Virus record (IMG/VR): IMGVR_UViG_3300029984_000001
Span: 62,001 to 126,000 of that record
DNA length: 64,000 bases
Direction: 5' to 3' (one strand)
Shown piece after piece: positions 27,601-46,310 of this stretch. Under the pieces are notes generated by a model, which was not told the origin of the DNA, did not search any database, and saw only the letters and a program-made list of their open reading frames with translations. The position numbers and the translations under genes were made by a program. How positions within the stretch are numbered: the first letter of the stretch is position 1; each line of letters starts with the position of its first letter.

Positions 27601-27819
27601 AAAATTACCCTAGATGTAATAGTGAATAAATGGATATATTTATATGGACAAGGGACACAATTTGCATTAGAATTATTTCCTGCATTTGCCAATATGATTA
27701 CAAACGCATATAATGGGCAATTCTTAAATAATCAACCAGCAATTGAAAAGCAATGTGGAACTCATATGGTAAACTTCTCTAAAGGTGTATTAAATATTAT
27801 AGAAAGTGCTATTAAATAA
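24685..27819 (+). CDS. large virion protein (internal-head-like, with protease-like dyad)
   Basis: Many hydrophobic-x-E|S/G/A candidate prohead-protease sites (IIKES, LFAES, IVTES, LLEES, YLEEG, ISLES, YLQES); VVLGHG and IFLMSC motifs. Confidence 0.6.
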   Translation: MGQFLQQIIKESKNVHGRDINLGVMPDYLKDDVITSMKNQGMSEKDIDLTVNSTDEDEKYSLQSKGVLSANDNVFPERFEKEKIELIKKSENIVEEYKNYINFEFDKIIKGNSNEDRIGPEGAIINIFSELTDNEKGNLPEEKVKRFLLESFFEISEDPKQIKKLLQLRINYNNKIITLLQKMLRTNYQILGISSEEAESLTKGLSHSDSKISGSNIKMIKELIIKNEKKFKPRPDMVDLRSLGFGVAFITNEDLRDVERYGKIDRLIHLLMRYDCVVLGHGSDHSSEWTDKVVQHQDHVKNLNKEYSNVDKQIKMMKKQLEKQYDNDTFKRLLSSGDSVLERIINYDHEDDHGKKFILNWYHIKESDIPKFKDAAKDILDYNKNIKELEDKRTERVKDMESIQDKEKEINSEEEKNRKWGIQNIKTEHGGPYTDINELCEQLIKEGFKKIFLMSCNPGHYKLSNDVLKHKGVIIHNAENTLFAESSVDNNENNEIVTESLDWDITSTELKLIDFCEANEIDYNNQQLLEESYFYLMENQEYLEEGIIGDLWQGLKTLVKKILQALIYLFKNAIAFVRALFNKIRQFFTGVSNPDAEFHNNKVSFISLESAQVKEVNVNNFNQLKVAVIKSCASISKEIDILSQKQTSMTKQTQSYIEKKGRDNMNEMVDMSLIIPYNEADTEIIKEDTQEIIDPNDRPDIVKEALKMITKRRIAYLQESDTTTVNQLTKSYSDTYLYSLVDKTYNEQLMKFIRTSHEIDKTEDSFKDIEYDVKRRQTSAAILNILKSDNIVLMISENNLPLPRTFKVITATDIRPGETKKKKVFIDVTTLITNDNGVYKCNPRSIDILLAYLVNGATQYIYYADPKRIIMDRNMISEGAWCFSKLFTYVIDYLVKVSVNGNMRDQIMYISSVYYLKTVLNKDLSDSHYKICKDISGLSDREIEILNIKFENENYTNIKTFIHGISDLCVNDKITLDVIVNKWIYLYGQGTQFALELFPAFANMITNAYNGQFLNNQPAIEKQCGTHMVNFSKGVLNIIESAIK

Positions 27820-30041: not shown

Positions 30042-30141
30042 TGATTAAATAATTATGCTCCTAAATTTCATTATTATAATATAGAAGGTACTTAATTGTA
30101 CCTTCTTATTTTATCCTTAACTTACGAATGAGGTGATTATA

Positions 30142-31344
30142 TTGAAAGAGTTTATGAGAAGAGTTTCTTTAGAAGAAGAGATATATGATATGAATAGATA
30201 TAATATAAATACTAGACCTATTTTACGTGAAATACATACCGCTGATGTTCATTTTGGTGCATTAGATCCAAAAATACAATATGATATACTAGAAGAACAA
30301 TTTCTTAATAAATTAGAAGAAATAGAATTCGATGTATTATCTATAAATGGAGATTTATTCAATCGAAAAGGAATGACTAATTCGCCTATAACTTCATACG
30401 CTGCAATGTATGTGGCTAGATGTGTAAATATATGTAAAAAGAAAAGTAATAATCCTACAATGGTTATAATAGATGGTACAGATTCTCATGATGCAGGTCA
30501 ATTATCTTTATTTTATCATTATTTAAAAGATCCAGATATAGATATGAGAATAGTTACCAAAGTACAATTTGAATATATTAAAGGTGCTAAGATACTCTGT
30601 ATACCAGAGATGTATAATATGGGAGAAGATTATTATAATCATTTTTTAAAACATAGTGGATTATATGACGGAGTATTCATGCATGGTATGATTAAAGGAG
30701 CAGTTCATCAAGATGGAAGTGAAGGTATCAACTCATATAAAGCTCCGACATTCAGTATAAATGATTTTAATAACTGTTTAGGACCTATTATATGTGGACA
30801 TGTACATATTCCAGGATGTTTTAATAGGTATATTTATTATACAGGTTCCCCATTAAGATATGCTCATGGACAAGAAGAAGAAAAAGGTTTTATATTCTTA
30901 TTACATAATCTGAATGACCAATCTCATTATGTCCATTTTGAACCTATAAAGTCTTTTATATATGAGACTATTTTTTTAGATGATATTATTAATTCTGACC
31001 CTAAAGTTATATCTGACTTTATATGGCAATTAAAAAGTAAGGGTGTAGATAATTTAAGAATTAAATTCAATAAACCTTTGTCTGAAAATGGACTTAATAA
31101 TCTGGGAATTCTGAAAACATATTTTAGAAATATAAATTATATAAAATTTGATTATAATAATAAAGAAAAAATAGAAGAACAAAAAATGATTAATGAATTA
31201 AATGATAAATTCTCTGAATATGATTTTATATTTGATGATAATTTATCTGCTGAACAGCAATTTGTAATGTATGTAAATCATAAAGAAAAAAGTGAGTTTA
31301 TTACTGTAGATGAATTTAAACAGATCTTAAATGATGAATATTGA
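30142..31344 (+). CDS. SbcD/Mre11-like metallophosphoesterase nuclease
   Basis: HTADVHFG, NGDLFN, GTDSHD, MHG, CGHVH, YTGSP motifs; TTG start after GAGGTG. Confidence 0.88.
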   Translation: MKEFMRRVSLEEEIYDMNRYNINTRPILREIHTADVHFGALDPKIQYDILEEQFLNKLEEIEFDVLSINGDLFNRKGMTNSPITSYAAMYVARCVNICKKKSNNPTMVIIDGTDSHDAGQLSLFYHYLKDPDIDMRIVTKVQFEYIKGAKILCIPEMYNMGEDYYNHFLKHSGLYDGVFMHGMIKGAVHQDGSEGINSYKAPTFSINDFNNCLGPIICGHVHIPGCFNRYIYYTGSPLRYAHGQEEEKGFIFLLHNLNDQSHYVHFEPIKSFIYETIFLDDIINSDPKVISDFIWQLKSKGVDNLRIKFNKPLSENGLNNLGILKTYFRNINYIKFDYNNKEKIEEQKMINELNDKFSEYDFIFDDNLSAEQQFVMYVNHKEKSEFITVDEFKQILNDEY

Positions 31345-31453: not shown

Positions 31454-33235
31454 ATGAATGTTGCTAGACGACAAAAATTTATGAATAATGGAAGTAGAAC
31501 TGTATCTTTTTCTGATAAGAAAGTAGAAATAGTTTTTGATATAGGAATGCTTGATTTAATGTGTTCTTATGTTTTATCTGAAAATAGAACTATTAAAAAG
31601 AGTCAATTAATAAATATGAGAAATCTGTTTGAATGTATAGATTTAGAATTATATAGAACAGATATAGAAAAAAAGAAAAGAATAGATTTTATAAGAAAAG
31701 GATTAGAGGGAAGAATACTAAGAAATCTAAAAGAATATACATTAATATTGCAATATATTAATGGTGGTTTTCTAGATACAAATAATTTAGATGTAGATAT
31801 AACATCTGCTACTATTTTAAACTCTGACGAGATGCATTTTATAAATGAAACTGTATCCTCAGCATTAAAATATACCTTTATATATAACGATGTAGATAGA
31901 ATGTATAGTGTATTAACAAGATTTAAAGCTGCTGATTATGTATCAAAACAATATATGGTAAATGAACTTGAGGGAATTATTGCTGATATGCAAAATAAAT
32001 TCAGACGAGTTAGAGCTGACTCTACAAATGAATTGGAATTTAGATTAAAACCAGAAATATTAGAAGATTCTTTTAGAGATATTTATGATAAGTTAACAAA
32101 TCCATCTTCTAAATTAGTAACAGGATGGCAAGGTTTTAATGAAATGCTTGGTGGAGGTTTCTTTGGAACTAGACTTTACATGTTATTAGGGCTAACAGGA
32201 GGAGGAAAATCTTTAACACTATTGGATATATGTCTTCAATTAAAGAAATATAATAAGAATTTCAAATGTAAAGATCCATCTAAAAAACCTTGTATTGTGT
32301 ATCTTACAATGGAGAATACAGTTGAAGAGACTGTAGAAAGATTATTCGAAATGTCAACAGGAAGAGAAATTCAAGGATTATCATTTGAAGAGGCTTTACA
32401 TTTACTTGTAACAGATGGAGAGTTATATTTATCAGACGAATCTCCAATAGATATAATAATAAGATATAAAGCTAATAAATCTGTTGATACTGGATATTTA
32501 TATGAGATGACTGAAGATTTAGAAGATGAAGGAATGGAAGTAATTGCAGTAGTTCAAGATCATATTGGAAGAATGAGATCTACTCAAAATCTTACAGAAA
32601 CTAGATTAGAATTAGGAACTGTAGCAAATGAAATGAAAACATTCTCTCAATTAAAAGAAATTCCATTTATCACAAATTTCCATCTGAATAGAGAAGCAGC
32701 CGCAAAAATAGATGAGGCTACTAATTGTAATAAATCAGATTTAATTAGAGTATTAGGTAGAGCTAATGTTGCAGAATCTCAAGTTATGATTAATAATATA
32801 GATGGTTGTTATATGATAAATCAAGAATGGGATCAAAATGGTAATAAATGGTTAGGTGTAATGAGAACAAAGAAAAGGTTTAAAGCGAGTGATAGAGCTG
32901 TTATATTCATGCCATATACATCTCCTAATTCCCCTAAACTATTAGAAGATTATTATGCTACAATACCAGTATTTAGAGATTCACTTAGAGAAAATGTTAT
33001 TGGATACAACCAACCACAAAAGAAATCTAATAATAAAATACAACCAAATCCTTATAATGGAAATATAAGATCTATTGACGAGGTAATAGGTTCACAAAAT
33101 AAATTTGTAGATACAAGAACAGAAATAAACATATTCGATATAGAAAAATTAGCAGATTCATCTTGTGGACATAGAGCTGATTTGGTTAAAGATATAATAC
33201 CATTGAAAAAATTTATGACAAGAGTACCTGCATAG
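31454..33235 (+). CDS. DnaB-like replicative helicase
   Basis: TGWQGFNEMLGGGF, Walker A GLTGGGKS, YLTMEN, VQDHI, HLNR; AACA-N6-TA at 31414-31425. Confidence 0.88.
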   Translation: MNVARRQKFMNNGSRTVSFSDKKVEIVFDIGMLDLMCSYVLSENRTIKKSQLINMRNLFECIDLELYRTDIEKKKRIDFIRKGLEGRILRNLKEYTLILQYINGGFLDTNNLDVDITSATILNSDEMHFINETVSSALKYTFIYNDVDRMYSVLTRFKAADYVSKQYMVNELEGIIADMQNKFRRVRADSTNELEFRLKPEILEDSFRDIYDKLTNPSSKLVTGWQGFNEMLGGGFFGTRLYMLLGLTGGGKSLTLLDICLQLKKYNKNFKCKDPSKKPCIVYLTMENTVEETVERLFEMSTGREIQGLSFEEALHLLVTDGELYLSDESPIDIIIRYKANKSVDTGYLYEMTEDLEDEGMEVIAVVQDHIGRMRSTQNLTETRLELGTVANEMKTFSQLKEIPFITNFHLNREAAAKIDEATNCNKSDLIRVLGRANVAESQVMINNIDGCYMINQEWDQNGNKWLGVMRTKKRFKASDRAVIFMPYTSPNSPKLLEDYYATIPVFRDSLRENVIGYNQPQKKSNNKIQPNPYNGNIRSIDEVIGSQNKFVDTRTEINIFDIEKLADSSCGHRADLVKDIIPLKKFMTRVPA

Positions 33236-34563: not shown

Positions 34564-35799
34564 TTGTATAATGAAATATTAAATAGAGGTCAAGGATTTA
34601 CGGTAGATGAATCAATGAAATTCTTTGCAGACCCATATCAACAATTATTTCAGATAGATGGTGAAGCAGGGACAGGTAAATCCACGGTATTAAAACATAT
34701 AATAGCTAGAAATAGAATACCTTTAGAACGCATATTAGCCATGTCATATACTGGAGCAGCCGCAGTTATTTTAAAACTAAGTGGTTTCCCTAATGCTAAA
34801 ACATTACATTCAGGATTATATCATCCAGTAGATACATATATGACAGATAAACAGACAAATCAAATAATTTACAATACATATTATAATAGACCCAAGACCA
34901 CTACAGGATTTACACCTAAAATAAAAAGTAATTTTGATAATATTGATTTAATGATAATAGATGAAGCTCCAACTGTACCTATGTCAATGAGAAAAGATAT
35001 TATGAAACATGGAATAAAAGTTATAGCTTCAGGAGATCTTTTCCAATTACCTCCATTATTTGAGAAACCTGCATTTTTAACAGATGGTGTAGTACATCAT
35101 TTAACTGAACCTATGAGACAAGGTACTAACTCAAATATATTATATCTCGCAAGAAGAGCCAGAAGAGGTTTACCTATAAACTATGGATATTATGGAGATT
35201 GTTATGTAACAGATGAAGATGACTTGACTGATACAATGATTATGAGATCTGATATAGTAATATGTGGAACTAATAAAAAAAGAGATGAAATTAATAAAAG
35301 AGTTAGAGAAATAAAAGGTACTTGTAATAGTGAATTACCATTAAGAGGAGAAAGAGTAGTATGTAGAAAGAATAATTATAAAACTGTAATAGATGGAATT
35401 AATTTAGCAAATGGGTTGATAGGAACCGTAATGAATAATCCTGGAGTAGATAATTATGATAATAATACTTTTAAAATAGATTTTCAACCATTATTATTTC
35501 CAGGAATATTTAGTGATCTAAGATGCGATTATAAATATTTTATGGCTCCTTATAGTGAAAAAGAAAAAATTAAACAAGATAAATATAGTCTTGGTGAAAA
35601 ATTTGAATTCTCTTATGCAAGTACATGTCATCTTGCACAAGGTGCTTCACTTGCTAACGGTATTTATATCGAAGAATATATGTCACCAGAATTAAATGAT
35701 AGACTTAATTATGTAGGAATTAGTAGATTTCGGCAAGGTATGATATATATAAAAAGAAAAATTAGATTATACAATTGTGGAAGTTGGGATAGAGGTTAA
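34564..35799 (+). CDS. SF1B Dda/RecD-like DNA helicase
   Basis: GEAGTGKS, IIDEA, GDLFQLPP, TCHLAQG, YVGISR. Confidence 0.88.
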   Translation: MYNEILNRGQGFTVDESMKFFADPYQQLFQIDGEAGTGKSTVLKHIIARNRIPLERILAMSYTGAAAVILKLSGFPNAKTLHSGLYHPVDTYMTDKQTNQIIYNTYYNRPKTTTGFTPKIKSNFDNIDLMIIDEAPTVPMSMRKDIMKHGIKVIASGDLFQLPPLFEKPAFLTDGVVHHLTEPMRQGTNSNILYLARRARRGLPINYGYYGDCYVTDEDDLTDTMIMRSDIVICGTNKKRDEINKRVREIKGTCNSELPLRGERVVCRKNNYKTVIDGINLANGLIGTVMNNPGVDNYDNNTFKIDFQPLLFPGIFSDLRCDYKYFMAPYSEKEKIKQDKYSLGEKFEFSYASTCHLAQGASLANGIYIEEYMSPELNDRLNYVGISRFRQGMIYIKRKIRLYNCGSWDRG

Positions 35800-35840: not shown

Positions 35841-36611
35841 ATGCCAAAGAGATTTAATTGTAAAAATGAAGAGGAAATGAGGACAGATATTAATAATAGA
35901 TTAGCAATATTGTGTGCACTAACAGGTTCTCATAATTATAACCTTAATACTAAAAATTCAGATAGAGATTCAAAAATATTTATAATGCCCAACATAGATG
36001 ATATCTATAATCATAAAATATTCACAAAATCATATAATATTGAATTCAATAATAATGATTTTTCTGTATATGATATTAGAAGATTACCAGATTTATTATG
36101 TAAATCTAATTGTAATTTTATGGAAATGTTATTTACTGTTGATTTGAGTATACATGAAATGTTTACTAAAGAAATAGAAGAAATATATAATATGAAAGAT
36201 GAGATAGCCAGATTTAATTTGTCATTCTTATACACTTCATTATATAATAATGCTAGATTATTTCAAGATGAATATATCAAAAAGGGTAATATGAAATCAG
36301 CATCACATTGTTTGAGATTATTAAGAACACTTCAGAAATATGCTTTGAACGATTTTACTGATTTTAAAAAAGCGTTATGGTTTGAAAACAATCCTAAAGA
36401 TTTAATCATGTATATAAAAACAGGAGAATATGACGAAAATAGATATTCATTCTCTAGTATTAATATACCTAAACTACTATCAGATGAATTTAGGAAAGCT
36501 GAAAAGTTTGAATCTAAATATAAACAATATGATTATGTACAAGAAACAGAAGATAAATTAAATAAAATAGTTAAAGACATGGTTCTTAAATATATAAAGA
36601 GTATGTTATAA
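35841..36611 (+). CDS. nucleotidyltransferase (Pol beta superfamily, RlaP/NrdC.11-like)
   Basis: GSHNYNLNTKNSDRD motif; K.N.N..E.L and HCLRLL downstream. Confidence 0.75.
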   Translation: MPKRFNCKNEEEMRTDINNRLAILCALTGSHNYNLNTKNSDRDSKIFIMPNIDDIYNHKIFTKSYNIEFNNNDFSVYDIRRLPDLLCKSNCNFMEMLFTVDLSIHEMFTKEIEEIYNMKDEIARFNLSFLYTSLYNNARLFQDEYIKKGNMKSASHCLRLLRTLQKYALNDFTDFKKALWFENNPKDLIMYIKTGEYDENRYSFSSINIPKLLSDEFRKAEKFESKYKQYDYVQETEDKLNKIVKDMVLKYIKSML

Positions 36612-36682
36612 ACTAAAAATATTTATAATTATATATTATATAACTGAATAAATAATAATATATTTTGAAAGGTAGTGTTTTA

Positions 36683-37054
36683 ATGAACAATTTTATGAAG
36701 AGAGACGAAATAATTAATGAGGATTTATTAAAAGAGGGGTTAATCAACCCAGATGCTTTACTCAACAAAAAAGAGAAATCTTATATGATACTATACTTTG
36801 CGACAGAACCAGTATCAAAAGAAGAAGAAAAAAGCTGGCATGTTGCTGTAGGAAGAGAAGAAGCATATAATTTTATCAAAGGAATGATAAGTTGTATAGA
36901 TTTAGAATCAACGAAAGTAGTTGTAGGAGGAACGACATATGAAGATGCTAAAAATGCCTATCAATTCATGAAATACATATCACAGTTCATGAATGATCCA
37001 ACGTTTAATATCGACGAATACTATACTCCAGATGAAGATGAGAAAGGAGAATAA
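36683..37054 (+). CDS. hypothetical acidic protein
   Basis: Start at MNNFMKR after GAAAGG; TATATTATA at 36632. Confidence 0.7.
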   Translation: MNNFMKRDEIINEDLLKEGLINPDALLNKKEKSYMILYFATEPVSKEEEKSWHVAVGREEAYNFIKGMISCIDLESTKVVVGGTTYEDAKNAYQFMKYISQFMNDPTFNIDEYYTPDEDEKGE

Positions 37055-37059
37055 TATTA

Positions 37060-37506
37060 ATGGCTAATGATTATAATTATTTCACTCAGAATATACAAAG
37101 AATGGGTGAAGAATTTTTAATGTTAAAGAATTCAAAAGATTTTCAAAGAGAAGCTCCAGCTATATTTAGACAATTAGCAAGAAGACAAATAGATTTAGAA
37201 ATGTACGGACACTTCTTTCTAGAAAAACAATTCTTAGAAAGTTGTATTAATGTTGCGAATGAGGAAATTTTACTAAATAAAGCAAGTGCAATAGGATTAG
37301 GGTATTATGTAGATTCTATGACATATCTGAATGGAGGTGTAGATCCTTATTTTCTAACCATCTTAAAAATGTATAGAGAGAAATGTGATGTTTATTCAAT
37401 TGTACATCAACATTTATGTATGTTAAGGGATACTGGGAATATTAATTATATAAAGAGTCTAGCAAGTATTCTAACAACAAATAGGACATTAGGAAATGCA
37501 TTGTAA
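37060..37506 (+). CDS. hypothetical protein
   Basis: ORF track, RBS AAAGGAG. Confidence 0.75.
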   Translation: MANDYNYFTQNIQRMGEEFLMLKNSKDFQREAPAIFRQLARRQIDLEMYGHFFLEKQFLESCINVANEEILLNKASAIGLGYYVDSMTYLNGGVDPYFLTILKMYREKCDVYSIVHQHLCMLRDTGNINYIKSLASILTTNRTLGNAL

Positions 37507-37560
37507 AATTTAAACCCTAAACATAAGAATAAATTTATGTTTATAGGAGGTTTAATTTTT

Positions 37561-38058
37561 ATGGCAAGTATAGATGATCTAATTAAATTATACAGAGATA
37601 CATTTGGTGATGAGGAATTAATCGTCATATCAGATAATGTTAAGGTTTTTAAAAATGCAGAAGGTCGTAGATTAATATTCGATGAGGATAGTAGAATGAT
37701 TCATTCTATTGCAGTTAATACTGATGGGTCTAACTTTGGAGTTCAGAATCTATTTCAATTCGAATCATTAATGTACGATCAAGTTCAATTCATGAATAAT
37801 TATGGTGGTGGAAAAGAACTGTCTGTTTTATTAGATAAATTAAAAGAAATTAACGTTATCGATGAAGATAAAAGATTAGAATTAGTTAATTACTTTAAAA
37901 GTCGATTTGCATTCGTTGATGGATATGGTAATAAACCATATGAAGATGTTAATGACAAAGACCGATCATATATTGATAAAGAACGTATACCTACGAATGA
38001 TGATGGTGAGATATTAACAAGTAAAGATACTTTATCAATAAATAAAATAAGACACTAA
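37561..38058 (+). CDS. hypothetical protein
   Basis: Start at MASID after AGGAGG. Confidence 0.75.
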   Translation: MASIDDLIKLYRDTFGDEELIVISDNVKVFKNAEGRRLIFDEDSRMIHSIAVNTDGSNFGVQNLFQFESLMYDQVQFMNNYGGGKELSVLLDKLKEINVIDEDKRLELVNYFKSRFAFVDGYGNKPYEDVNDKDRSYIDKERIPTNDDGEILTSKDTLSINKIRH

Positions 38059-38141
38059 AAAATTAAAACTAAAACTATTTATAACTATATATTATAATAA
38101 TGAAAATACATAACCAAAAAACAAATTTAGGAGGAATAAAT

Positions 38142-38963
38142 ATGTATAATGGACAACAAGGAAATCAATTCGGAATGGGTGGAACTTATTATGCACCACA
38201 AAAGAAAATAGAAATGCATCAAGCATTAACTGCTGAAGAAGAAGCAATGTTAAAGAATCAAAATAGATCTAATCTAAGTTTTAAACTAGATCAAATGGAA
38301 GTGCTTACAGGTATTTGTACACATAAAAGTAATACAACTAAAATGCCAGATATAACTTTATTAGGTGGAACTAGAGTTAAATGTAACATATGTCAAGAAG
38401 AATGGGATTTATTAGAGGATTTAGAATTATTTAAATCAGCCGTAGGTATTGTTATATCAGGATTACAAACAATGAAAACATGGTGGATTGATATCCCACC
38501 AGAAACTGCTAGAGAATACTTCCCAATTATACCATTATTAAAGAAAGCTCCTGCTGGTCTTCAAATGTCTATGCAATGTTGGAGACAATATGAAGAAGCT
38601 AGACAAGTAAATACAAGCAATGGAAATAACTCATTTAACATGTGGAATAACATAATGACAGGTGGATTTAATCCAATGCAACAACAACAAATGATGATGC
38701 AACAACAAATGATGCAACAACAAATGCAACAACAACAATATGGATACGACCCAAATCTAGCAATGAGTAATATGTATGCTGGAAATAATATGATGGGTGG
38801 CAATCCAATGGTACAAAACCAAGATCCAGGAAACTTCACTCCAGGTGCTGGTGGTTATGCTCCAGGAACAACAGGTATGATGAATAATATGGGTAATGGT
38901 CAAGGACAAACTGAAACTAGTGTAAGTAATACTGTACAAGTAACTAAAGTAATGAGTATGTAG
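38142..38963 (+). CDS. Zn-finger protein with Q/M/N/G-rich low-complexity tail
   Basis: CTH...CNIC ligands; QQQQMMMQQQMMQQQMQQQQYGY; AGGAGG before ATG 38142; own promoter and terminator. Confidence 0.8.
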   Translation: MYNGQQGNQFGMGGTYYAPQKKIEMHQALTAEEEAMLKNQNRSNLSFKLDQMEVLTGICTHKSNTTKMPDITLLGGTRVKCNICQEEWDLLEDLELFKSAVGIVISGLQTMKTWWIDIPPETAREYFPIIPLLKKAPAGLQMSMQCWRQYEEARQVNTSNGNNSFNMWNNIMTGGFNPMQQQQMMMQQQMMQQQMQQQQYGYDPNLAMSNMYAGNNMMGGNPMVQNQDPGNFTPGAGGYAPGTTGMMNNMGNGQGQTETSVSNTVQVTKVMSM

Positions 38964-39071
38964 TATAATATTTTTAAATAAATATAATGATGGGGTTCGT
39001 TCTCCATCATTATTTTTTACCTTCATTATAAACTATATAATGACAAAAAATAATTGAAGGAAGTGATGTAA

Positions 39072-40649
39072 TTGGCTATGCTGAAAAAAATGGATAAGAC
39101 AATGGAAGAAAATATTAGAGGATACGGTAATGAGATTATAACAAAGTTATTCCCTGATAATATAAGAGTCAATATAGGAATGTATATTGGTTCAAAAGGA
39201 AATTCTGGTTATTTAAATATGATACGGGAAGTTTTTCAAAATGCTTTTGATGAAGTTATGAGAGCAACAAGAGGTAAATCTCCTTGTAGTATAATAAGGA
39301 TTTTCTTTGATGAAAGAACTTTAGATTGTATGGTACAAGATGATGGTAGAGGTTTACCGTTTGAAAAGATGCATGACATATATGCTGAATTATCTACATC
39401 ATCTAATTATGAGAAGGAATTAGGAGACTACAGCTCAGGCAAACATGGGTTAGGTGGAAAAATTACGAATGCCCTTTGTGATAAATTTTCAGCAGAGTCT
39501 TATCAATTAGGAGATGCAAGAAAAATAGAATTTGAAGATGCAGTTGTTAATAAAAAAGGAATTTATAAGATACCTTATAAAAATAATCAACAAGGTACAT
39601 TAGTTTTATTTCATCCTTCAATAGAAATAATGGGTGGAATTAATCTAACTTGTGAAGAAGTATTAGCAATGATGAGAGGTATAGTATTCTTAGGTAAATT
39701 AGGTAGAATAGTAGAATTTCATGGTATTACTAATATGGGTAAACAAGTTGAAACTACTATAGTTAATGAATATGGAATACTAACAGATTTACTTGGTAGA
39801 GTTAAATCTCAATTGATTACACCAATTTTAATTGGTGGTGATGATGGTAACTGTAAAGCTGATATAGCATTTACATATGATGGTGAAGATACTTTGGAAG
39901 AGATACATAGTTATGCTAACTATTCTCCAACTACAGATGGTACACATGTTAAAGGATTTAAAGCTGGTATATCAAAATTCTTTATGGATTATATGAATAA
40001 GATTTATTTAGCCAAAGCGGGTTCTTTAAAAGGAAAGAAATCTAAATCTAATGCTAAACCATTACAAGTCGTAGCTTCAGATGTAAGTTGTGGATTAAAA
40101 GCTATTGTATCAGCATGTGCATTGATTCCTATCTTTGGAGGACAAGCTAAAGAAACAATAACTAATGAAGAACTTGAGACATTCATAAAAGATTTAGTAA
40201 TTAAAGCATTACAATCTTGGAGTAAAGAGAAGCCTATGGAATTAAATAAGATTTGTAATTATCTTAAAGATATAGCTATACTTCGGACTAAAGATGAAGT
40301 AGAAAAGATAAAGATTGGTTCTAAATATAAGACAGATGCTTTAAGTGGTGGACTTCCAAAGAAGTACCTAAGACCACAAGGAACTAAAGATCTAGAATTT
40401 ATAATAGTTGAAGGGGATTCAGCTTTAGGACCAGGAAGAGCAACAAGATGTAAATCTAGACAAGGTATGTTACCAATTAGAGGAAAGATGCCTAATATCT
40501 TTAATATGACAGATAGAAATAGAAAAGAGTTCTTAGAGAATGATGAAATTGCAGCATTTATTAATATCATATCTGGTGGTACAGGAAAATTCGGTGAAAA
40601 ATTTATGCCTAGTGATACTAAATACACTAAGATTATTATCATGTCGGAT
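39072..40649 (+). CDS. gyrB: DNA gyrase/topo IV subunit B, exon 1
   Basis: GMYIG, EVFQNAFDE, DDGRGLP, GKHGLG, GTHVKGF, VEGDSA, PIRGK, IIIMSD. Confidence 0.92.
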
Positions 40650-41802
40650 AAAATGTGTGTCCCTTCTCTATAGTAATATAGAGTCGAATAACCTATTAAA
40701 TGCTGGAAAGTCCACAAAAGTTCATAAACCATTATTATAATAAGAAATGGTTACGAAAGTAGAAACAATATATGAACCTGACATATGCTGAAATAAAAGC
40801 TTTAGTTGAGATTCTAAAGTGCTAAGTGTTATTGACAAGGGATTCTCAGCAGTAAAATAATTTGCTTAAATAAAATAATTAATAAAAAGGAGGTGAAAAA
40901 TATGAATGTTTTTATGCAACGATGTTTTGATTATTTTCCTATAAATATATCAAATCCTACTATAGAAATAGTTAGATATCCAGAGATGTGGAAACCTTTG
41001 AATATAATTGGAATAAAATATAATACATATAATATTAGCACAAAAGGTAGAATCTATTCAATACCAAAACAGAGATTATTAAATCCTCAATGTAATTCTG
41101 ATGGATATATGAAAATAAAATTATTAACAAATATTGAATCAAGAGAAGAGTTCAGTTTACATAGATTAGTTTTAATGACATTCTTTCCAATTTTCTATAT
41201 GAATGAATTAGAAGTGAATCATATAAATGGTAAAAAAGATGATAATGATATTGCAAACTTAGAATGGTGTAGTAGATCTCAAAATATACATCATAGTTAT
41301 TTACTTGGGTCTAGAAGTCAAATTGGTGTAAATAATGGTAATGCTAAATTTAATGAAAATGATGTAAGAAGAATATGTGAATATAGACAACAAGGATTAG
41401 TTGCAAGTCAAATATGTAAAGCTATGGATTTGGATTGTGAACCTAATAAGAGACATAGACGAGTAGAAAATATATTATTCGGAGTTACATGGAAACATAT
41501 ATCATCGCAATATGGAATATAAGTTTAAGCAACTTATTTTATTCAACGACTATCGAAAGCTATATACTAAGACAATATTCTTAGTTGAAAATAAGGTATA
41601 TATTAACAATATATACACGAAGCAAGTAGAGTAGAGCCAAGTGGTAGAACCGTTCCGTAATAAGGATATAAGAGTTCTTTAAATCGAAGTGATAGGTTGC
41701 CTATATATGATATAGGTAAATGATATAGTCTTAACACCTACTTAACAGTAGGGAAGTTCATAAGAGAACTGTATTATCTAACGAATAGTATGAAAACAAT
41801 TG
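40650..41802 (+). mobile_element. group I intron in gyrB
   Basis: Exon ends ggaU pairing IGS gtcc; P/Q/R/S elements near-identical to intron 1; terminal G 41802; splicing restores IIIMSD|ADKDGDHI. Confidence 0.9.
40902..41522 (+). CDS. intron-encoded HNH homing endonuclease
   Basis: HRLVL, VNHINGKKDDN...NLEWCSRSQN; in the P6 loop. Confidence 0.88.
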   Translation: MNVFMQRCFDYFPINISNPTIEIVRYPEMWKPLNIIGIKYNTYNISTKGRIYSIPKQRLLNPQCNSDGYMKIKLLTNIESREEFSLHRLVLMTFFPIFYMNELEVNHINGKKDDNDIANLEWCSRSQNIHHSYLLGSRSQIGVNNGNAKFNENDVRRICEYRQQGLVASQICKAMDLDCEPNKRHRRVENILFGVTWKHISSQYGI

Positions 41803-42654
41803 GCAGATAAAGATGGAGATCATATAGCTGTACTTGTATTAAAAGTCTTTATGGTATTATATCCAAGATTAGTTGAAGCTGGAATGGTATACAGAGCAAT
41901 AGCTCCATTATATGGTATACCAAATGCTAGGAATAAAAACAAAGTAGATAAATTCTTTACTACAAGATTAGAATATACTGAATGGTTATATAAAAATTTT
42001 AGTAAGAATAATACTATATTAAAACCAGATGGTAAAAAGTTAAGTAACGTTGAAGCAGAAGAAATATTATATAAAAACTCAGATTATACATATGATTTAA
42101 ACGTATTCTCAAATAGTTATGCAATAAATCCTATATTATTAGAACAAGTAATATATAATATTGTAAAAGCAAACCAATCAAAAAAGGATTTATATACCTT
42201 TATGAAAAAATCTATAGAATCTGATAAGAACTTTAGATTCATCAAAGTTGACAAAGTGAATAACATTGTTACTATAAAAGGTGAATATGAAGAACTTGAT
42301 CAAACTATAATTTTAAATAAAGTATTTATGACTGACTTAGAACAATTACTACAACATGTAGCTAATAATGTTTTATTATCTTTTATAATAAATGATAATC
42401 CTTGTAGCTTATATGAATTAGTTACTAAATTTGAAAATAGTGCACCAAAGCATATAAGACGGTATAAAGGATTGGGACAAATGAAAGATCTAGAATTACA
42501 ATCAACAACACTACATCCTGATATGGATAGAACTCTAATAAGATATACAATATTATCTGCTGCTGATTTTATTACAAAAATGAGATATTTAGAAACTGAT
42601 AAATGTAGATTGCTTGTTGGAAGAGTTAATACTAGAGAAGACGTAATGGATTAG
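41803..42654 (+). CDS. gyrB: DNA gyrase/topo IV subunit B, exon 2
   Basis: ADKDGDHI, APLY, RYKGLGQM, TTLHPDMDRTL. Confidence 0.92.
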   Translation, partial: ADKDGDHIAVLVLKVFMVLYPRLVEAGMVYRAIAPLYGIPNARNKNKVDKFFTTRLEYTEWLYKNFSKNNTILKPDGKKLSNVEAEEILYKNSDYTYDLNVFSNSYAINPILLEQVIYNIVKANQSKKDLYTFMKKSIESDKNFRFIKVDKVNNIVTIKGEYEELDQTIILNKVFMTDLEQLLQHVANNVLLSFIINDNPCSLYELVTKFENSAPKHIRRYKGLGQMKDLELQSTTLHPDMDRTLIRYTILSAADFITKMRYLETDKCRLLVGRVNTREDVMD

Positions 42655-42667
42655 GAGGAATATAATA

Positions 42668-45052
42668 ATGCCAGAAAAGATTATTGAAGTAGATGCATTA
42701 CAAAAATCTATAGATGATTATGGAAGTTATGCAATATACGCATTAGCTACAAGAGTAACAGCAGATTATAGGGATGGACTTAAACAAGTCCATCGTAGAA
42801 TATTAATGGCTGCAACTAGATTAGGTGCATTACCAGGAACATTAAAGAAATCATCCAGAGTAGTAGGAGAAACATTAAAAGAACATCCTCATGGAGATAC
42901 ATCTGTATATGATGCTATAAAAATATTAGCAAATGATTTTGATACTTATATACCTTTAATTTATGGGGAAGGGAATTGGGGTTCTATTGATGGAGATTCT
43001 CAAGCTGCATCGAGATATACTGATTTATATTTATCTCAATTTTCACTTGATAATTATATCTCTGACATTAAATCTACACCACAAATAGTAGACTGGGTTC
43101 CAACATTTGATAATGATGATATGGAGGTACAATATTTATCTTCTAGATCTCCAGTAATATTAATAAATGGTAACTATGCGATTGGTATAGGTATGATGTC
43201 TGTAATATCAAAACACAATAATATTGAAGTATATGATGCAGCTATAAGATTATTAAGAGATCCTAATTACGAGGTTGTGTTACCTCCAGATCAGTGTGCT
43301 GAATGTGACATTATAAATACAGATTGGAAAGCAATAGCTAATACTGGACATGGAAGTTATATCGTAAGAGGAAGAATGATTGTAATTCCAGAAGTAAATA
43401 ATAAAATGATTAGAGACAATAAAAAGTATTTAGGATTACCTGCTGTAGAAATAATATCAACACCAGATTATGTAACATTAAATGCTATTAGAGAAAAAAT
43501 AACTAAATTATTAGAAGATAAAGTATTACCTCAAGTAATAGATATATGTTCTGATGAATCTAAAGGACCTAAAGAGATGGGTTGTTTGATTATTTTAAAG
43601 AAAGGTTCTGATCCTAAATTTGTTATGGATATGATATACAGACATACAGAAATGCAACACACTGTAACTGAAAATTATCAGATCTTATATAAATACAATT
43701 CGGTTGTTTGGGGACAAAAACGAATTCTTCAAGAATGGCTTGAGTGGGATAGACTTAGACTAACTAGAAAATATTATAATATACTTCAAAATATAAGAAC
43801 CCAATTATCAAAGAAAGATGCATATGTAAAATGTCTATCATCAAATAAAATAGAGAAAATAATTAGCATGATAAGAAAGAAAAAAGACACTGATATGAAT
43901 TCATCAATAGAATGGTTAGTATCTAATATAGGTCTAACTACAGGACAATCTAAATTTATATTAGAACAAAAAATATATAAATTATCTGAAGGATATTTAG
44001 CACAATATAAATATGAAGTACAAGAATGTTTAAAGGATATAAACAATTATGAACAGAAAATTCTTAATACTGATATATTAGATAATGATATAGAGGCAGA
44101 ATTATTAGAAATGAAAATGAAATATGGTAAGAAAAGAAATTGTACCTTCATAGATAAATCTGTTATAAATAATATTCCTAAAGGAGAATTTAAACTTATC
44201 ATAACAGCTAAGAATTTCATAAAGAAAATTCCAGCCAATGATCCAGTAGGTTCTTTAAAAGATGATAGGGCTGTTCAAATATTAAAGATAGACAATACAC
44301 AAAATATTTTAATATTTGATACTATAGGAAAAGTGTATAAGTTACCAGTGCATAAACTTCCTATATCAGATAAAGCTTCTAATGGTTGTGATATAAGATT
44401 GATTATAAAGAATCTTTCTGCAAATATTTGTACAGTTATGTCTGAACCCGTATTACAAGATTTGATGAAAAGAAAAATAAAACACTTTATAGTAGTTCAA
44501 TCTAGATTAGGTAATATAAAGAAACTCGATATAGAAGATGTTTTAGGAGCTACCCCATCAGGATTGATATATGCTAAGATTGTTGGAGATAATGACTTTA
44601 TAAATGATGTTGTGATATGTCCTGACGGATTGGATATAATTGCTTATAGTGATAATAAAGCGTTAAGATATAATATATCACAAGTACCTCATTTAAAGAG
44701 AAGTACATCAGGATCTAAATCAATGAAAGCTGATTTTATAGATGGGTTAGTAGTATTAAATCCTAACATGACAGATTTAGTTGTGTTAACAGAAAAAGGA
44801 TATATAAATAAATTTGATGCTTTAGGACTACTTACATTACAAAGAGGAAAATCTGGAGGTAATGTAATTAAATTAGCTAAAGGAGATAAAATTAAGTATA
44901 TATTCGGTGCTGATGAAACTTATCATATACAAGCTGTTACTTCTAATGAAACGATAGAAATAAATATAAGTGATATAAAACCACAAAGCTCAATATCATC
45001 AGGACAAAAACTTCTTAAAGATAATGTCATAGCAGCTAGATTACATAAATAA
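42668..45052 (+). CDS. gyrA: DNA gyrase/topo IV subunit A
   Basis: DGLKQVHRRIL, HPHGDTS, catalytic AASRYT, C-terminal beta-pinwheel blades. Confidence 0.92.
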   Translation: MPEKIIEVDALQKSIDDYGSYAIYALATRVTADYRDGLKQVHRRILMAATRLGALPGTLKKSSRVVGETLKEHPHGDTSVYDAIKILANDFDTYIPLIYGEGNWGSIDGDSQAASRYTDLYLSQFSLDNYISDIKSTPQIVDWVPTFDNDDMEVQYLSSRSPVILINGNYAIGIGMMSVISKHNNIEVYDAAIRLLRDPNYEVVLPPDQCAECDIINTDWKAIANTGHGSYIVRGRMIVIPEVNNKMIRDNKKYLGLPAVEIISTPDYVTLNAIREKITKLLEDKVLPQVIDICSDESKGPKEMGCLIILKKGSDPKFVMDMIYRHTEMQHTVTENYQILYKYNSVVWGQKRILQEWLEWDRLRLTRKYYNILQNIRTQLSKKDAYVKCLSSNKIEKIISMIRKKKDTDMNSSIEWLVSNIGLTTGQSKFILEQKIYKLSEGYLAQYKYEVQECLKDINNYEQKILNTDILDNDIEAELLEMKMKYGKKRNCTFIDKSVINNIPKGEFKLIITAKNFIKKIPANDPVGSLKDDRAVQILKIDNTQNILIFDTIGKVYKLPVHKLPISDKASNGCDIRLIIKNLSANICTVMSEPVLQDLMKRKIKHFIVVQSRLGNIKKLDIEDVLGATPSGLIYAKIVGDNDFINDVVICPDGLDIIAYSDNKALRYNISQVPHLKRSTSGSKSMKADFIDGLVVLNPNMTDLVVLTEKGYINKFDALGLLTLQRGKSGGNVIKLAKGDKIKYIFGADETYHIQAVTSNETIEINISDIKPQSSISSGQKLLKDNVIAARLHK

Positions 45053-45134: not shown

Positions 45135-46310
45135 ATGAAAATTGAAAGTGTAGTCAAAGATAAATTATATACTTTAGTAAGTAAACAATATGAATTGAAT
45201 AAAGATAAATTAAAAAAATGTTTTGGTAGATTCGTTGAAAAAAGACAAGAAGATCTGTATGATATAGCCCCTGCTTCAAGAATATATTTTGGACAAGAAG
45301 ATATAGACGATTTCTTTAATTCCTTAGGTATGGCAGAAAAAGATGTCGTGGAGATTGTAAAAAATACATATTATTATCCTATAGCCAACTTCAATCCTAG
45401 AGCAGCTAAAGATTCGTTCACTTGTACTATATTATGCTTAGTAAGATATAGTTTATTACATAAACTAGAAAAAGAATTAGAAATGTATACTGCTTATATG
45501 TCATTCTCTGGTAAATTCTACCCATCAATACATTATTCATCTTTTCCTAAAGTACAACCTTCTGAATATAGACATGTAATAGAATATGTTGTTAATCATG
45601 AATTAAGTGGAAGGTTTGATATAAAGAAAGAGGGTAATGTATTTAAAGCTGTGCGTTCTATAGGAAGTACTTGGTATAATACTTATGGTAGTAAATTCAA
45701 ATCATTTGATGATGAAGATGTAGTTTATGTGATTCAACAATTACATAATAGAATCAAATCATTTATACAAAATATTGCTGAAGTATACTATGATGTATAT
45801 GCAAAGAAAGATACATATTTAACATATGATAGTGATAATTTATCAGATACCAGTTATCATCTGGCTGATAATGATTCATTAAGAATGGAAAGAATATTAG
45901 AAAAGTCTATGACTTATATGAATAATAATAGAGTTAATTATACATGGTGTATATCATCATCAGATCAATATGTAAGTGCTGACGAATTAAGAGAAATAAT
46001 GACATCTATAATAAATGAATCTAGTAATATACCAGATATGAGAGAATTTATAAGATGTATGTTGACAGTATTCTTTTCTCAATCAGACACTAAAGATATT
46101 AATGATCCACATTTTTTAGCTTTATCTATTGTTCCTAAACCAAATACAAAGGATCAATATGAAATAAGAAAGAAAGAAATTGTAGAGAAATGGTTAGATG
46201 AAAATTCACCACAATATAGAAAGAGAAGAAATAGACCTGCTACAGCATCTTCTTATCAAAAAGCTGTAGTGAAATATGTAGCTCTATGTGTATATAATGT
46301 AAACAAGTAA
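45135..46310 (+). CDS. hypothetical late protein, probably virion
   Basis: 391 aa; own late promoter and terminator (46308-46331). Confidence 0.6.
   Translation: MKIESVVKDKLYTLVSKQYELNKDKLKKCFGRFVEKRQEDLYDIAPASRIYFGQEDIDDFFNSLGMAEKDVVEIVKNTYYYPIANFNPRAAKDSFTCTILCLVRYSLLHKLEKELEMYTAYMSFSGKFYPSIHYSSFPKVQPSEYRHVIEYVVNHELSGRFDIKKEGNVFKAVRSIGSTWYNTYGSKFKSFDDEDVVYVIQQLHNRIKSFIQNIAEVYYDVYAKKDTYLTYDSDNLSDTSYHLADNDSLRMERILEKSMTYMNNNRVNYTWCISSSDQYVSADELREIMTSIINESSNIPDMREFIRCMLTVFFSQSDTKDINDPHFLALSIVPKPNTKDQYEIRKKEIVEKWLDENSPQYRKRRNRPATASSYQKAVVKYVALCVYNVNK

What the first reader, a model, noticed from the sequence alone, without database searches (positions are those of the whole stretch)
38142..38963. 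Prion-like Q/M/N/G-rich Zn-finger protein upstream of gyrB
A compact core with CxH...CxxC is flanked by nearly uncharged low-complexity arms: MYNGQQGNQFGMGG, and about 115 aa including QQQQMMMQQQMMQQQMQQQQYGY and NNMMGGNPM. Such composition is rare in phage proteins and typical of condensate- or amyloid-forming domains. It has its own early-type promoter, strong RBS and terminator. Candidate scaffold of a phage replication or transcription compartment, and a candidate FMxR partner (speculative).
Basis: partly seen in the sequence, partly recalled or inferred. Interest (0 to 1): 0.65.

Follow-up and report, generated by a model that had tools for sequence, protein, structure and literature searches.

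The report
Early jumbo-phage zinc hub with disordered arms
This is a real, strongly expressed early gene of an uncultured AR9-like giant phage from peat: a new protein family with a predicted zinc-bound dimeric core, two almost uncharged disordered arms and a conserved end-peptide, which most likely tethers partner proteins; its function is untested.

Summary
Window 38142-38963 (+) encodes a 273-aa protein with a 17-aa N/Q/G/Y arm, a folded core carrying CxH...CxxC, and a 113-aa Q/M/N/G tail with 4 charged residues. It is the most extreme low-complexity protein among my 295 called ORFs of this 263.6-kb phage.

It is not an orphan. A profile search found 618 representative clusters, nearly all of the 150 listed being 250-340 aa with the same plan. 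Cys59, His61, Cys81, Cys84 and Lys112 are invariant in 96 aligned members. The tails keep their composition but not their sequence, and end in a conserved tip, V-x3-K-x-F-x-V-COOH.

No Pfam, PHROG, NCBIfam, PDB-fold or GenBank-phage match exists. The gene has an AR9-type early promoter, an AGGAGG site and a terminator, and these recur around diverged orthologues. The core is predicted to form a homodimer (ipSAE 0.83, best control 0.00).

The core is acidic. Prolines in the tails are evenly spaced and aromatic residues are not, which argues against amyloid and DNA binding and for a flexible tether.

Best reading (about 0.4): an abundant early dimeric hub or adaptor. The condensate-scaffold idea is neither shown nor excluded. 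The FMxR link and a gyrase-specific role are not supported.

The parts
38080..38102 (+). Early (virion-RNAP type) promoter. The core TATATTAT is at 38088-38095 and the predicted transcription start is G38102.
   Evidence: It matches the genome-wide motif tTATAaTT[a/g]TATATTATa-N4-tGaa found upstream of 66 genes. It also matches the AR9 early consensus AAATATATATTAT-(6N)-G+1 (PMC5312081). The motif is conserved upstream of most orthologues examined (8 of 10 loci by exact TATATTAT, my count). The start site is inferred, not mapped.
38129..38134 (+). Shine-Dalgarno site AGGAGG, 7 nt before the start codon.
   Evidence: Read directly from the sequence. The same AGGAGGAA context is seen in orthologues.
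38142..38963 (+). CDS of 273 aa (P0001), stop codon included.
   Evidence: An identical product is on record from 11 to 17 contigs.
38142..38192 (+). N-terminal low-complexity arm, residues 1-17 (G/Y/Q/N/M, no charge).
   Evidence: Family-wide the N-arm is a median 20.5 aa with N18 Y15 G14 Q13 M12 %. Its pLDDT is below 50.
38193..38669 (+). Folded core, residues 18-176: two short helices, a three-stranded zinc ribbon, a long helical hairpin and a last short helix. It is predicted to form a homodimer.
   Evidence: AlphaFold2 with 96 sequences gives pLDDT 80-98 over residues about 20-155. The dimer scores ipSAE 0.83 against a best control of 0.00.
38316..38393 (+). Cys3His zinc site: C59 (38316-38318), H61 (38322-38324), C81 (38382-38384), C84 (38391-38393).
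   Evidence: These residues are invariant in 96 of 96 aligned members. The pattern C-x-H-(15-25)-C-x-x-C occurs in 146 of 146 members. Metal binding is inferred.
38670..38924 (+). Disordered Q/M/N/G-rich tail, residues 177-261.
   Evidence: pLDDT is below 50. The sequence is not alignable between members, but composition and length are kept.
38925..38960 (+). Conserved C-terminal tip, residues 262-273. Family consensus: V(-9) x x x K(-5) x F/M/L(-3) x V/A/L/I(-1)-COOH.
   Evidence: Position counts over 146 members: V 78 at -9; K 71 at -5; F 82, M 18 and L 14 at -3; V 59, A 26, L 20 and I 16 at -1. pLDDT rises to about 60 here.
38984..39013 (+). Intrinsic terminator: 12-bp stem, 6-nt loop, T run.
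   Evidence: Hairpin plus T-run is also seen just downstream of the orthologues.

Best explanation
The gene encodes an abundant early protein of an AR9-like jumbo phage that works as a dimeric, multivalent hub or adaptor.

Proposed mechanism:
1. A Cys3His zinc ribbon stabilises a small acidic core, which pairs through its helical hairpin into a homodimer.
2. Four nearly uncharged disordered arms project from each dimer.
3. The two long C-terminal arms (about 80-180 aa, Q/P/G/N/M-rich, with regularly placed prolines) act as flexible tethers.
4. Each tether ends in a conserved short hydrophobic-basic peptide that docks onto a partner protein, probably as an added beta strand.
5. The short tyrosine-rich N-arms add weak sticky contacts.
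6. Made from the first minutes of infection together with the replication genes, the hub gathers or holds its partner(s) at the site where phage DNA is first transcribed and replicated.

Shown: the gene, its architecture, family-wide conservation of the zinc ligands, arms and tip, and the early-promoter and terminator signals.
Predicted: the fold, the disorder and the dimer.
Inferred: zinc binding, tethering, docking, the identity of partners and the place of action.
For: - Family and architecture: 618 representative clusters at E<=1e-3, and nearly all of the 150 listed are 250-340 aa. C59, H61, C81, C84 and K112 are invariant in 96 sequences.
- Arms: about 2% charged residues; tail length 79-179 aa; composition kept while sequence diverges.
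- Conserved C-terminal tip.
- Evenly spaced prolines: mean z -1.41, and 90% of 145 tails have z<0. This is as expected for a linker kept extended and soluble.
- Core folds confidently and the tail is disordered.
- Homodimer prediction: ipSAE 0.84, 0.83 and 0.83 against a best control of 0.00. At least 81% of contacts are shared between runs and partner pLDDT is at least 74. The mark was reached by 20 of 30 solved homomers and 1 of 23 solved monomers.
- One relative, P0025, carries three tandem cores without a tail. This is consistent with cores that assemble.
- Early, monocistronic, strong-RBS unit conserved in most of the orthologous loci examined at about 30-35% identity. It matches the AR9 early promoter.
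- The genome has two RNAP beta-like genes, as AR9-type phages do.
- It sits in the replication block SbcD-like, DnaB-like, Dda-like, GyrB, GyrA.
Against: - No partner is known, and nothing shows that the tip binds anything.
- The tip's pLDDT bump could reflect conservation alone.
- The dimer is a prediction made with my own alignment, so the calibration holds only roughly.
- The phage is uncultured and no RNA run holds it. Expression, timing and abundance are therefore inferred from signals only.
- The N-arm (15% Tyr) and the Met-rich tail of this member would also fit self-association rather than pure tethering.
Confidence: 0.4

Rival explanations
1. Condensate scaffold. The dimeric core plus four prion-like arms drive phase separation into a membraneless replication or transcription compartment. 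In this reading the condensate stands in for the chimallin shell of nucleus-forming jumbo phages.
For: - Multivalency comes from the predicted dimer.
- The arms are nearly uncharged and rich in Q/N/G with Tyr, Phe and Met stickers. The N-arm has Y 15% and M 12%. The tail has about 9.6% aromatic residues and 8% Met.
- It is the top compositional outlier of the proteome.
- The expression signals are early and strong.
- AR9-like phages are described as lacking chimallin (PMC13282480).
Against: - Aromatic residues are not evenly patterned as in well-studied phase-separating prion-like domains: mean z +0.23, and only 2% of tails lie below -1.64.
- The core is acidic and shows no RNA- or DNA-binding signature.
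- A conserved C-terminal docking-type tip and a bounded tail length fit a tether better.
- There is no experimental or localisation data.
- Chimallin absence was not tested in this genome.
Confidence: 0.2
2. Host-takeover decoy or sequestering factor. The tip or the core binds a host protein, for example a protease adaptor site, a clamp or a chaperone, and titrates or redirects it early in infection.
For: - It is an early, abundant, small acidic dimer, as many phage takeover proteins are.
- The plan of dimer, linker and C-terminal docking peptide is that of the ClpX adaptor SspB (own knowledge, not tested).
- The family is confined to one phage clade and is absent from AR9 itself.
Against: - The host is unknown.
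- The tip resembles no host motif that I could test.
- The gene sits inside a conserved replication block rather than among variable accessory genes.
Confidence: 0.13
3. Accessory subunit or regulator of the phage type II topoisomerase encoded just downstream.
For: The gene lies immediately or nearly immediately upstream of gyrB in all 16 fetched loci that carry a family match, down to about 30% identity. Small zinc-finger regulators of gyrase exist, such as YacG (own knowledge).
Against: - The whole block from the SbcD-like gene to GyrA is colinear in the clade and in AR9, so adjacency carries little information.
- Target and gyrB are separate transcription units, with a terminator between them.
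- AR9 has the topoisomerase but no homologue of this protein.
- There is no sequence or fold likeness to YacG.
Confidence: 0.1
4. A non-canonical single-stranded-DNA-binding protein. In this reading the core binds ssDNA, and the tail and tip mirror the disordered linker and C-terminal tip of bacterial SSB.
For: - The plan of core, disordered Q/G/N/M/P linker and conserved tip is SSB-like.
- No Pfam SSB or gp32 was detected in this complete genome, and no gp32 in five other carriers.
- It is co-located with the helicases.
- The Cys3His ligand set is the same as in T4 gp32 (own knowledge).
Against: - There is no OB fold. The model is a zinc ribbon plus helices, with no PDB match.
- Core net charge is median -4, range -11 to 0.
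- The tip is hydrophobic-basic, not acidic.
- The gp32 search had a silent control, so that absence is weak.
Confidence: 0.07
5. Amyloid- or prion-forming protein.
For: - This member's tail has 32% Q+N, long Q/M runs and only 6 Pro.
- A weak composition-driven match to the Sup35 amyloid chain was seen, at E about 1.
Against: - Family tails average 14% Pro and 11% Gly, with evenly spaced prolines.
- The tail sequence is not conserved, and no repeat unit is present.
- The Sup35 match is not significant.
Confidence: 0.03

Closest known systems
Bacterial SSB (OB-fold core, disordered linker, C-terminal tip)
   Same: It has an oligomeric folded core followed by a low-charge Q/G/N/M/P linker of about 100 aa and a short conserved C-terminal peptide. 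It is encoded among replication genes. Phage SSBs are the best-known prion-like-domain carriers (PMC5694896).
   Different: The core is a zinc ribbon plus helical hairpin, not an OB fold, and it is acidic. The tip is V-x3-K-x-F-x-V, not the acidic D-D-D-I-P-F type. There is an extra N-terminal Tyr-rich arm. No sequence or fold relation was found.
SspB-type tethering adaptors and FtsZ (core, flexible linker, docking peptide)
   Same: It has a predicted dimeric core, a long flexible linker and a short C-terminal peptide likely to dock on a partner. This is a likeness of architecture only.
   Different: The fold is unrelated. The linker is two to three times longer than in SspB. The partner is unknown. 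This comparison rests on my own knowledge and was not tested.
Eukaryotic prion-like low-complexity domains (FUS, hnRNPA1, Sup35 N)
   Same: The arms are nearly uncharged and rich in Q/N/G with Tyr, Phe and Met.
   Different: Aromatic residues are not evenly spaced, prolines are abundant and evenly spaced family-wide, and Met and Pro are much higher.
Early genes of Bacillus phage AR9 / PBS1 (Takahashivirus)
   Same: The early-promoter consensus is the same, including the 6-nt spacing to a G start. The replication block is colinear (SbcD, DnaB, gp53-like wedge, Dda, topoisomerase II, glucosaminidase). There are two RNAP beta-like genes.
   Different: AR9 and all 50,697 GenBank phage records searched have no detectable homologue of this protein. 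Helicase identity to AR9 is only 31%.
Database labels of two relatives in BFVD: 'Zinc-finger double domain protein' and 'Rad50 zinc hook motif' (Myoviridae sp. ctwwN25, ctIty1)
   Same: These are true family members (Foldseek E 8e-10 and 2e-8, full length).
   Different: The labels look like automatic motif matches. All four zinc ligands lie within one chain, and there is no Rad50 ATPase or long coiled coil. No C2H2 Pfam model reaches its cut-off.

Membership tests
Zinc ribbon (two-knuckle Cys/His zinc site on beta hairpins) | Four zinc ligands in two knuckles, conserved across the family. | tested here: met
   C59, H61, C81 and C84 are invariant in 96 of 96 members. C-x-H-(15-25)-C-x-x-C occurs in 146 of 146 members.
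Zinc ribbon (two-knuckle Cys/His zinc site on beta hairpins) | The knuckles sit on short beta strands. | tested here: met
   The AlphaFold2 model has strands 71-75, 78-81 and 87-89 at pLDDT above 90. Only weak sequence echoes of Elf1-type ribbons were seen (E 0.018).
Zinc ribbon (two-knuckle Cys/His zinc site on beta hairpins) | Bound zinc. | not testable with these tools
   This needs metal analysis of purified protein.
SSB / T4 gp32 single-stranded DNA-binding proteins | OB-fold DNA-binding core. | tested here: not met
   There is no PF00436 or PF08804 match. The model is a ribbon plus helices, with no PDB fold match.
SSB / T4 gp32 single-stranded DNA-binding proteins | Acidic C-terminal tip. 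| tested here: not met
   The tip consensus is V-x3-K-x-F-x-V with Lys at -5.
SSB / T4 gp32 single-stranded DNA-binding proteins | Binds ssDNA. | not testable with these tools
   Only the acidic core charge (median -4) speaks against it.
Prion-like / amyloid-forming Q/N domain | Q/N-rich, low charge, at least about 60 aa. | tested here: met
   The tail has Q19 and N17 in 113 aa with 4 charged residues. Family tails have Q 17%, N 9% and 2-3% charged residues.
Prion-like / amyloid-forming Q/N domain | Few prolines, or evenly spaced aromatic stickers. | tested here: not met
   Family Pro is 13.7% and evenly spaced (mean z -1.41). Aromatic spacing equals shuffles (mean z +0.23). PLAAC itself was not available.
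Prion-like / amyloid-forming Q/N domain | Forms amyloid or condensates. | not testable with these tools
   This needs in vitro or in vivo assays.
AR9-type early (virion-RNAP) transcription unit | Promoter AAATATATATTAT-(6N)-G upstream of the gene. | tested here: met
   The sequence AACTATATATTAT-(6N)-G lies at 38083-38102. The genome-wide motif is shown and the AR9 consensus. In AR9 this same one-base deviation was inactive before g057. Here that base is not strongly fixed in the genome's own motif.
AR9-type early (virion-RNAP) transcription unit | The phage encodes multisubunit RNAP subunits. | tested here: met
   There are two PF00562 matches: E 1e-14, over the cut-off, and E 4e-4. The beta-prime domain PF00623 was not detected.
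AR9-type early (virion-RNAP) transcription unit | Transcript present early in infection. | not testable with these tools
   No RNA run holds the phage.
Rad50 zinc hook (label of a relative) | A single CxxC at the apex of a long coiled coil, with zinc shared between two chains, and an ABC ATPase head. | tested here: not met
   All four ligands lie in one chain. The helices are 20-25 residues long. The best Mre11-Rad50 match covers only a helical hairpin at Z 6.2, within noise.
DksA/TraR and YacG small zinc-finger regulators | C4 finger of the respective Pfam families, and fold likeness. | tested here: not met
   Neither family appeared among the Pfam matches listed for the 96 members (the list shows the 25 families with most members). 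Nothing appeared in the PDB sequence or fold searches.

The most novel reading that the evidence does not exclude
In chimallin-less AR9-like jumbo phages, this family is the scaffold of a membraneless, condensate-type early replication and transcription compartment. The zinc-stabilised dimers would be cross-linked by their sticky arms. Client proteins would be recruited through short terminal peptides, such as the FMxR motif of this lineage, or through the tip.
Probability: 0.12. Interest if true: 0.9.

Novelty: categorically new. Interest (0 to 1): 0.55.

Why it matters
A large and diverse clade of uncultured jumbo phages of about 190-260 kb carries this gene. These phages are distant kin of AR9/PBS1 and occur in peat and other metagenomes. 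The gene sits at a fixed place in their replication block, behind an early promoter and a strong ribosome-binding site. Yet it matches no described family or solved fold.

Proteins that combine a small oligomeric core, long uncharged disordered arms and a conserved end-peptide are typically interaction hubs. Finding its partners would show how these phages organise the first minutes of infection. If the arms drive phase separation, it would be a second and quite different way for giant phages to build a replication compartment.

It is also a clean natural data set, with hundreds of diverged tails on one core, for asking what selection keeps in a bacterial-virus disordered region. Here that is composition, length and proline spacing, but not sequence.

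Tried and rejected
- Family scans found nothing usable. Pfam and PHROGs on the protein gave only low-complexity noise. PHROGs, Pfam and NCBIfam on 96 or 50 members gave only single sub-threshold zinc-finger echoes.
- tblastn of two cores against 50,697 GenBank phage records found nothing. Megablast of the region also found nothing.
- The first AlphaFold2 run, with 4 sequences, was useless (mean pLDDT 35). It was repeated with 96 sequences.
- Fold searches gave no match. Foldseek against PDB had no hit at E<=0.001. VIA-align wide found only generic helical hairpins at Z<=6.6, within the stated noise. The ESM Atlas by shape and by features gave nothing.
- The PDB profile search gave only marginal zinc-ribbon matches and composition matches, including an SSB tail and Sup35 at E 0.7-1.
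A narrower alignment worked for viral contigs and found nothing in representative prokaryote genomes, so there is no host clue.
- The motif AACTATATAW was first tried as a shared promoter word and was not enriched. TATATTAT was.
- Sequencing runs were all peat DNA, with no RNA. Contigs of four runs laid on 1,251 bases showed no variant of the gene and no tail length polymorphism.
- Rfam found nothing in 37500-42000, so the class of the gyrB insertion stays open.
- The minus-strand ORFs 38561-38839 and 38668-38808 are rejected. They are the Cys/Ile-rich and Val-rich mirror readings of the Q/M codon runs.
- The 287-aa start at 38100 is rejected, because the predicted transcript begins at its third base.
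- The gp32 searches had silent controls, so I treat that absence as weak.
- The big profile search was used because the word search and family scans left the protein open.

Full report
**1. What is there**

Window 38142-38963 (+) is an open frame of 273 codons. AGGAGG lies 7 nt upstream of the ATG. A 12-bp hairpin with a T run follows at 38984-39013.

The window is bases 62001-126000 of a 263,571-bp IMG/VR virus record that CheckV rates as complete. GC content is about 26%. Runs from 24 peat-metagenome studies hold the same DNA, and none is an RNA run. Contigs from four of those runs are identical over the gene.

The protein has three parts:
- A 17-aa N-arm (G5 Y3 Q3 M2 N2, no charge).
- A core of about 160 aa with C59-x-H61 and C81-x-x-C84.
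- A 113-aa tail (M19 Q19 N17 G16, four charged residues).

In a 60-aa window its Q/N/M/G/P/Y fraction reaches 0.85. The next protein reaches 0.63, and the median of 295 called ORFs is 0.35. The minus-strand ORFs over the tail are mirror readings of the Q/M codon runs.

**2. The phage**

The neighbouring genes are as follows:

| Window position | Product |
|---|---|
| 30133-31344 | SbcD/Mre11-like phosphoesterase |
| 31454-33235 | divergent DnaB-like helicase |
| 34564-35799 | PIF1/Dda-like helicase |
| 35841-36611 | nucleotidyltransferase |
| 36665-38058 | three small ORFs |
| 38142-38963 | the target |
| 39072 onward | GyrB, split by an insertion with an HNH/NUMOD4 ORF |
| 42668-45052 | GyrA |

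The nearest isolates by helicase are Bacillus phages AR9/PBS1 and other Gram-positive jumbo phages, at about 31% identity. The AR9 genome shows the same gene order. The genome has two RNAP beta-like genes.

An intergenic word, TATATTAT, is enriched fourfold. Sixty-six copies lie within 200 nt upstream of a same-strand gene; by my reading of the list about 40 of them fit the full consensus. Aligned, they give tTATAaTT[a/g]TATATTATa-N4-tGaa. This is the AR9 early, virion-RNAP promoter AAATATATATTAT-(6N)-G+1 (PMC5312081).

The target has such a site at 38088-38095. It predicts a start at G38102, a 40-nt leader and a monocistronic mRNA. It also rules out the 287-aa start at 38100.

The same promoter word, AGGAGG and a terminator hairpin flank most orthologues examined, down to about 30% identity: eight of ten loci by exact match, my count. 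So this is a conserved, strongly signalled early unit. The timing itself is inferred.

**3. The family**

A word search found only three relatives. Because the protein was left open, I ran the full profile search with the core. It found 618 representative clusters at E<=1e-3 and 366 at E<=1e-10. Nearly all of the 150 listed are 250-340 aa.

In 96 aligned members C59, H61, C81, C84 and K112 are invariant. All 146 members examined have C-x-H-(15-25)-C-x-x-C. Every member has the same plan:
- An N/Y/G/Q/M N-arm, median 20.5 aa.
- An acidic core, net charge median -4, range -11 to 0.
- A tail of 79-179 aa, with Q 17, P 14, G 11, A 10, N 9, M 8, Y 6 % and about 2% charged residues.
- A conserved tip.

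The tip position counts over 146 members are: V 78 at -9; K 71 at -5; F 82, M 18 and L 14 at -3; V 59, A 26, L 20 and I 16 at -1.

The tails cannot be aligned, but composition, length range and tip are kept. That is the signature of a functional disordered region.

Carriers in IMG/VR are phages of 186-252 kb. In every locus fetched that carries a family match, the gene lies between the Dda-like helicase and gyrB. The whole block is colinear, however, and the flanking genes are better conserved than the target. AR9 has the block without this gene. Adjacency to gyrB therefore says little.

No member matches Pfam, PHROGs or NCBIfam.

**4. Structure**

With 96 sequences AlphaFold2 gives pLDDT 80-98 for residues about 20-155. 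The elements are:
- Helices 31-38 and 51-58.
- A three-stranded ribbon (71-89) carrying the second knuckle.
- A hairpin of helices 94-114 and 129-154.
- A last helix, 164-172.

The tail is below pLDDT 50, with a small rise to about 60 at the tip.

Foldseek finds nothing in the PDB. In BFVD it finds only two family members from metagenomic 'Myoviridae sp.' records, with motif-derived names. The exhaustive aligner finds only generic helical hairpins at Z<=6.6.

Two copies of the core co-fold with ipSAE 0.84, 0.83 and 0.83 against 0.00 for the best of three controls. At least 81% of contacts are shared between runs, and partner pLDDT is at least 74. The mark was reached by 20 of 30 solved homomers and 1 of 23 solved monomers, and these counts hold only roughly with my own alignment.

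The interface is large and symmetric. By my reading of the fragment numbering (add 17 for P0001), it centres on the small-residue stretch A100-V104 of the first long helix and on the second long helix.

One relative, P0025, has three tandem cores and no tail.

**5. What the arms look like**

I compared the spacing of residue types in 145 tails with shuffles of each tail.

| Residue type | Mean z | Reading |
|---|---|---|
| Aromatic (Y/F/W) | +0.23 | no more even than chance |
| Gln | +1.14 | clustered |
| Pro | -1.41 | markedly even |

For proline, 90% of tails have z<0 and 47% lie below -1.64.

Abundant, evenly placed prolines and glycines argue against amyloid and for an extended, soluble linker. 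The missing aromatic patterning removes one hallmark of well-studied phase-separating prion-like domains. The high Tyr content of the N-arm and the Met content leave room for self-association.

This member, in a 26% GC genome, has swapped Pro and Ala for Asn and Met. The selected property therefore seems to be 'uncharged, polar, flexible' rather than any particular residue.

**6. Interpretation**

The best-supported model is an abundant early homodimeric hub. Its long arms tether a docking peptide, and its short arms add weak contacts. It would gather partners where phage DNA is first transcribed and replicated (confidence about 0.4).

The plan is that of SSB, SspB or FtsZ (core, linker, tip), built on an unrelated core. 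The rivals, with my confidence in each:
- Condensate scaffold, 0.2. Neither shown nor excluded.
- Host-protein decoy, 0.13.
- Topoisomerase accessory factor, 0.1.
- Non-canonical SSB, 0.07. The core is acidic, there is no OB fold, and the tip is not acidic. No canonical SSB was detected in the genome, though the gp32 control was silent.
- Amyloid or prion, 0.03.

**7. The FMxR suggestion**

The motif is real in this genome. I counted 15 N-terminal, 8 C-terminal and 18 internal copies. Shuffles give 0.24, 0.23 and 2.9. Carriers include the DnaB-like helicase, the SbcD-like protein and an RNAP beta-like protein.

It recurs in the 80%-identical relative L002. It is absent from the syntenic loci (8-20 kb) of eight more distant carriers of the family and from AR9. 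The family is thus far wider than the motif. A lineage-specific link is not excluded, but nothing supports it.

**8. Novelty and score**

This is an uncharacterised, widespread family with no detectable relative or known fold, in an uncultured branch of AR9-like jumbo phages. The architectural principle is familiar. The protein, its fold and its role are not. Interest is 0.55: solid and testable, but without a demonstrated function.

Read laying received 1,251 letters. Only table 11 was used. The split gyrB was handled piece by piece and never joined.

Noticed in passing
whole genome G000; in the window e.g. 30133-31344 (residue 7), 31454-33235 (residue 587 of 593), 36665-37054 (residue 10), 55376-57544 (three copies near the C-terminus): A short peptide, F-M-x-R, is hugely enriched and sits mostly at protein ends. 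I counted 15 copies within 15 residues of an N-terminus, 8 near a C-terminus and 18 internal. Shuffles give 0.24, 0.23 and 2.9. Several ends read F-M-K-R-D. Carriers include the helicase, the SbcD-like nuclease and an RNAP beta-like protein. It looks like a terminal sorting or docking signal. It is present in the close relative L002 but not in more distant relatives or AR9.
   Followed up: partly
window 39072-42654: gyrB is split. The N-part ORF is 39072-40673 and the C-part ORF is 41800-42654. An insertion of about 1.1 kb between them carries an HNH_3/NUMOD4 endonuclease ORF (40893-41522). In relative L002 the two parts join seamlessly in one 805-aa gene. Other relatives carry an intein plus HNH in gyrB (L008). 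Rfam finds no group I or II intron model here, so the class of the insertion is open.
   Followed up: partly
whole genome; window sites e.g. 999, 36632, 38088, 46366, 51603, 58865, 61201: The genome has a strongly conserved promoter, tTATAaTT[a/g]TATATTATa-N4-tGaa. Of 66 TATATTAT sites upstream of genes, 60 are on the + strand. It equals the AR9 virion-RNAP early promoter, including the 6-nt spacing to a G. This places the peat phage in the AR9/phiKZ-type transcription scheme.
   Followed up: yes
window 56063-56674 (in ORF 55376-57544) and G000 14451-14936: There are two RNA polymerase beta-like (Rpb2_6) regions, as expected for a phage with virion and non-virion multisubunit RNAPs. The beta-prime domain model PF00623 found nothing.
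   Followed up: partly
G000 45317-46108 (+, 263 aa) and 44079-44522 (+, 147 aa), outside the window: Two further proteins begin with N/Y/G/P-rich uncharged arms resembling the target's N-arm. They are the next strongest low-complexity outliers of the proteome and are possible co-associating partners.
   Followed up: no
window 36665-38058: Three small ORFs (129, 148 and 173 aa) directly upstream of the target are conserved with it across much of the clade (the 173-aa one in fewer loci). They have no family match beyond a sub-threshold NTF2-immunity echo.
   Followed up: partly
protein P0025 (metagenomic relative, 473 aa): This relative has three tandem copies of the core, each with its CxH...CxxC site, and lacks the low-complexity tail and tip.
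   Followed up: no
window 24685-27819: A 1044-aa ORF upstream of the replication block matches a PHROG 'virion structural protein' in its C-terminal 280 residues. A gp53-like wedge gene lies on the minus strand in relatives. Structural genes are therefore interleaved with replication genes, as in AR9.
   Followed up: no
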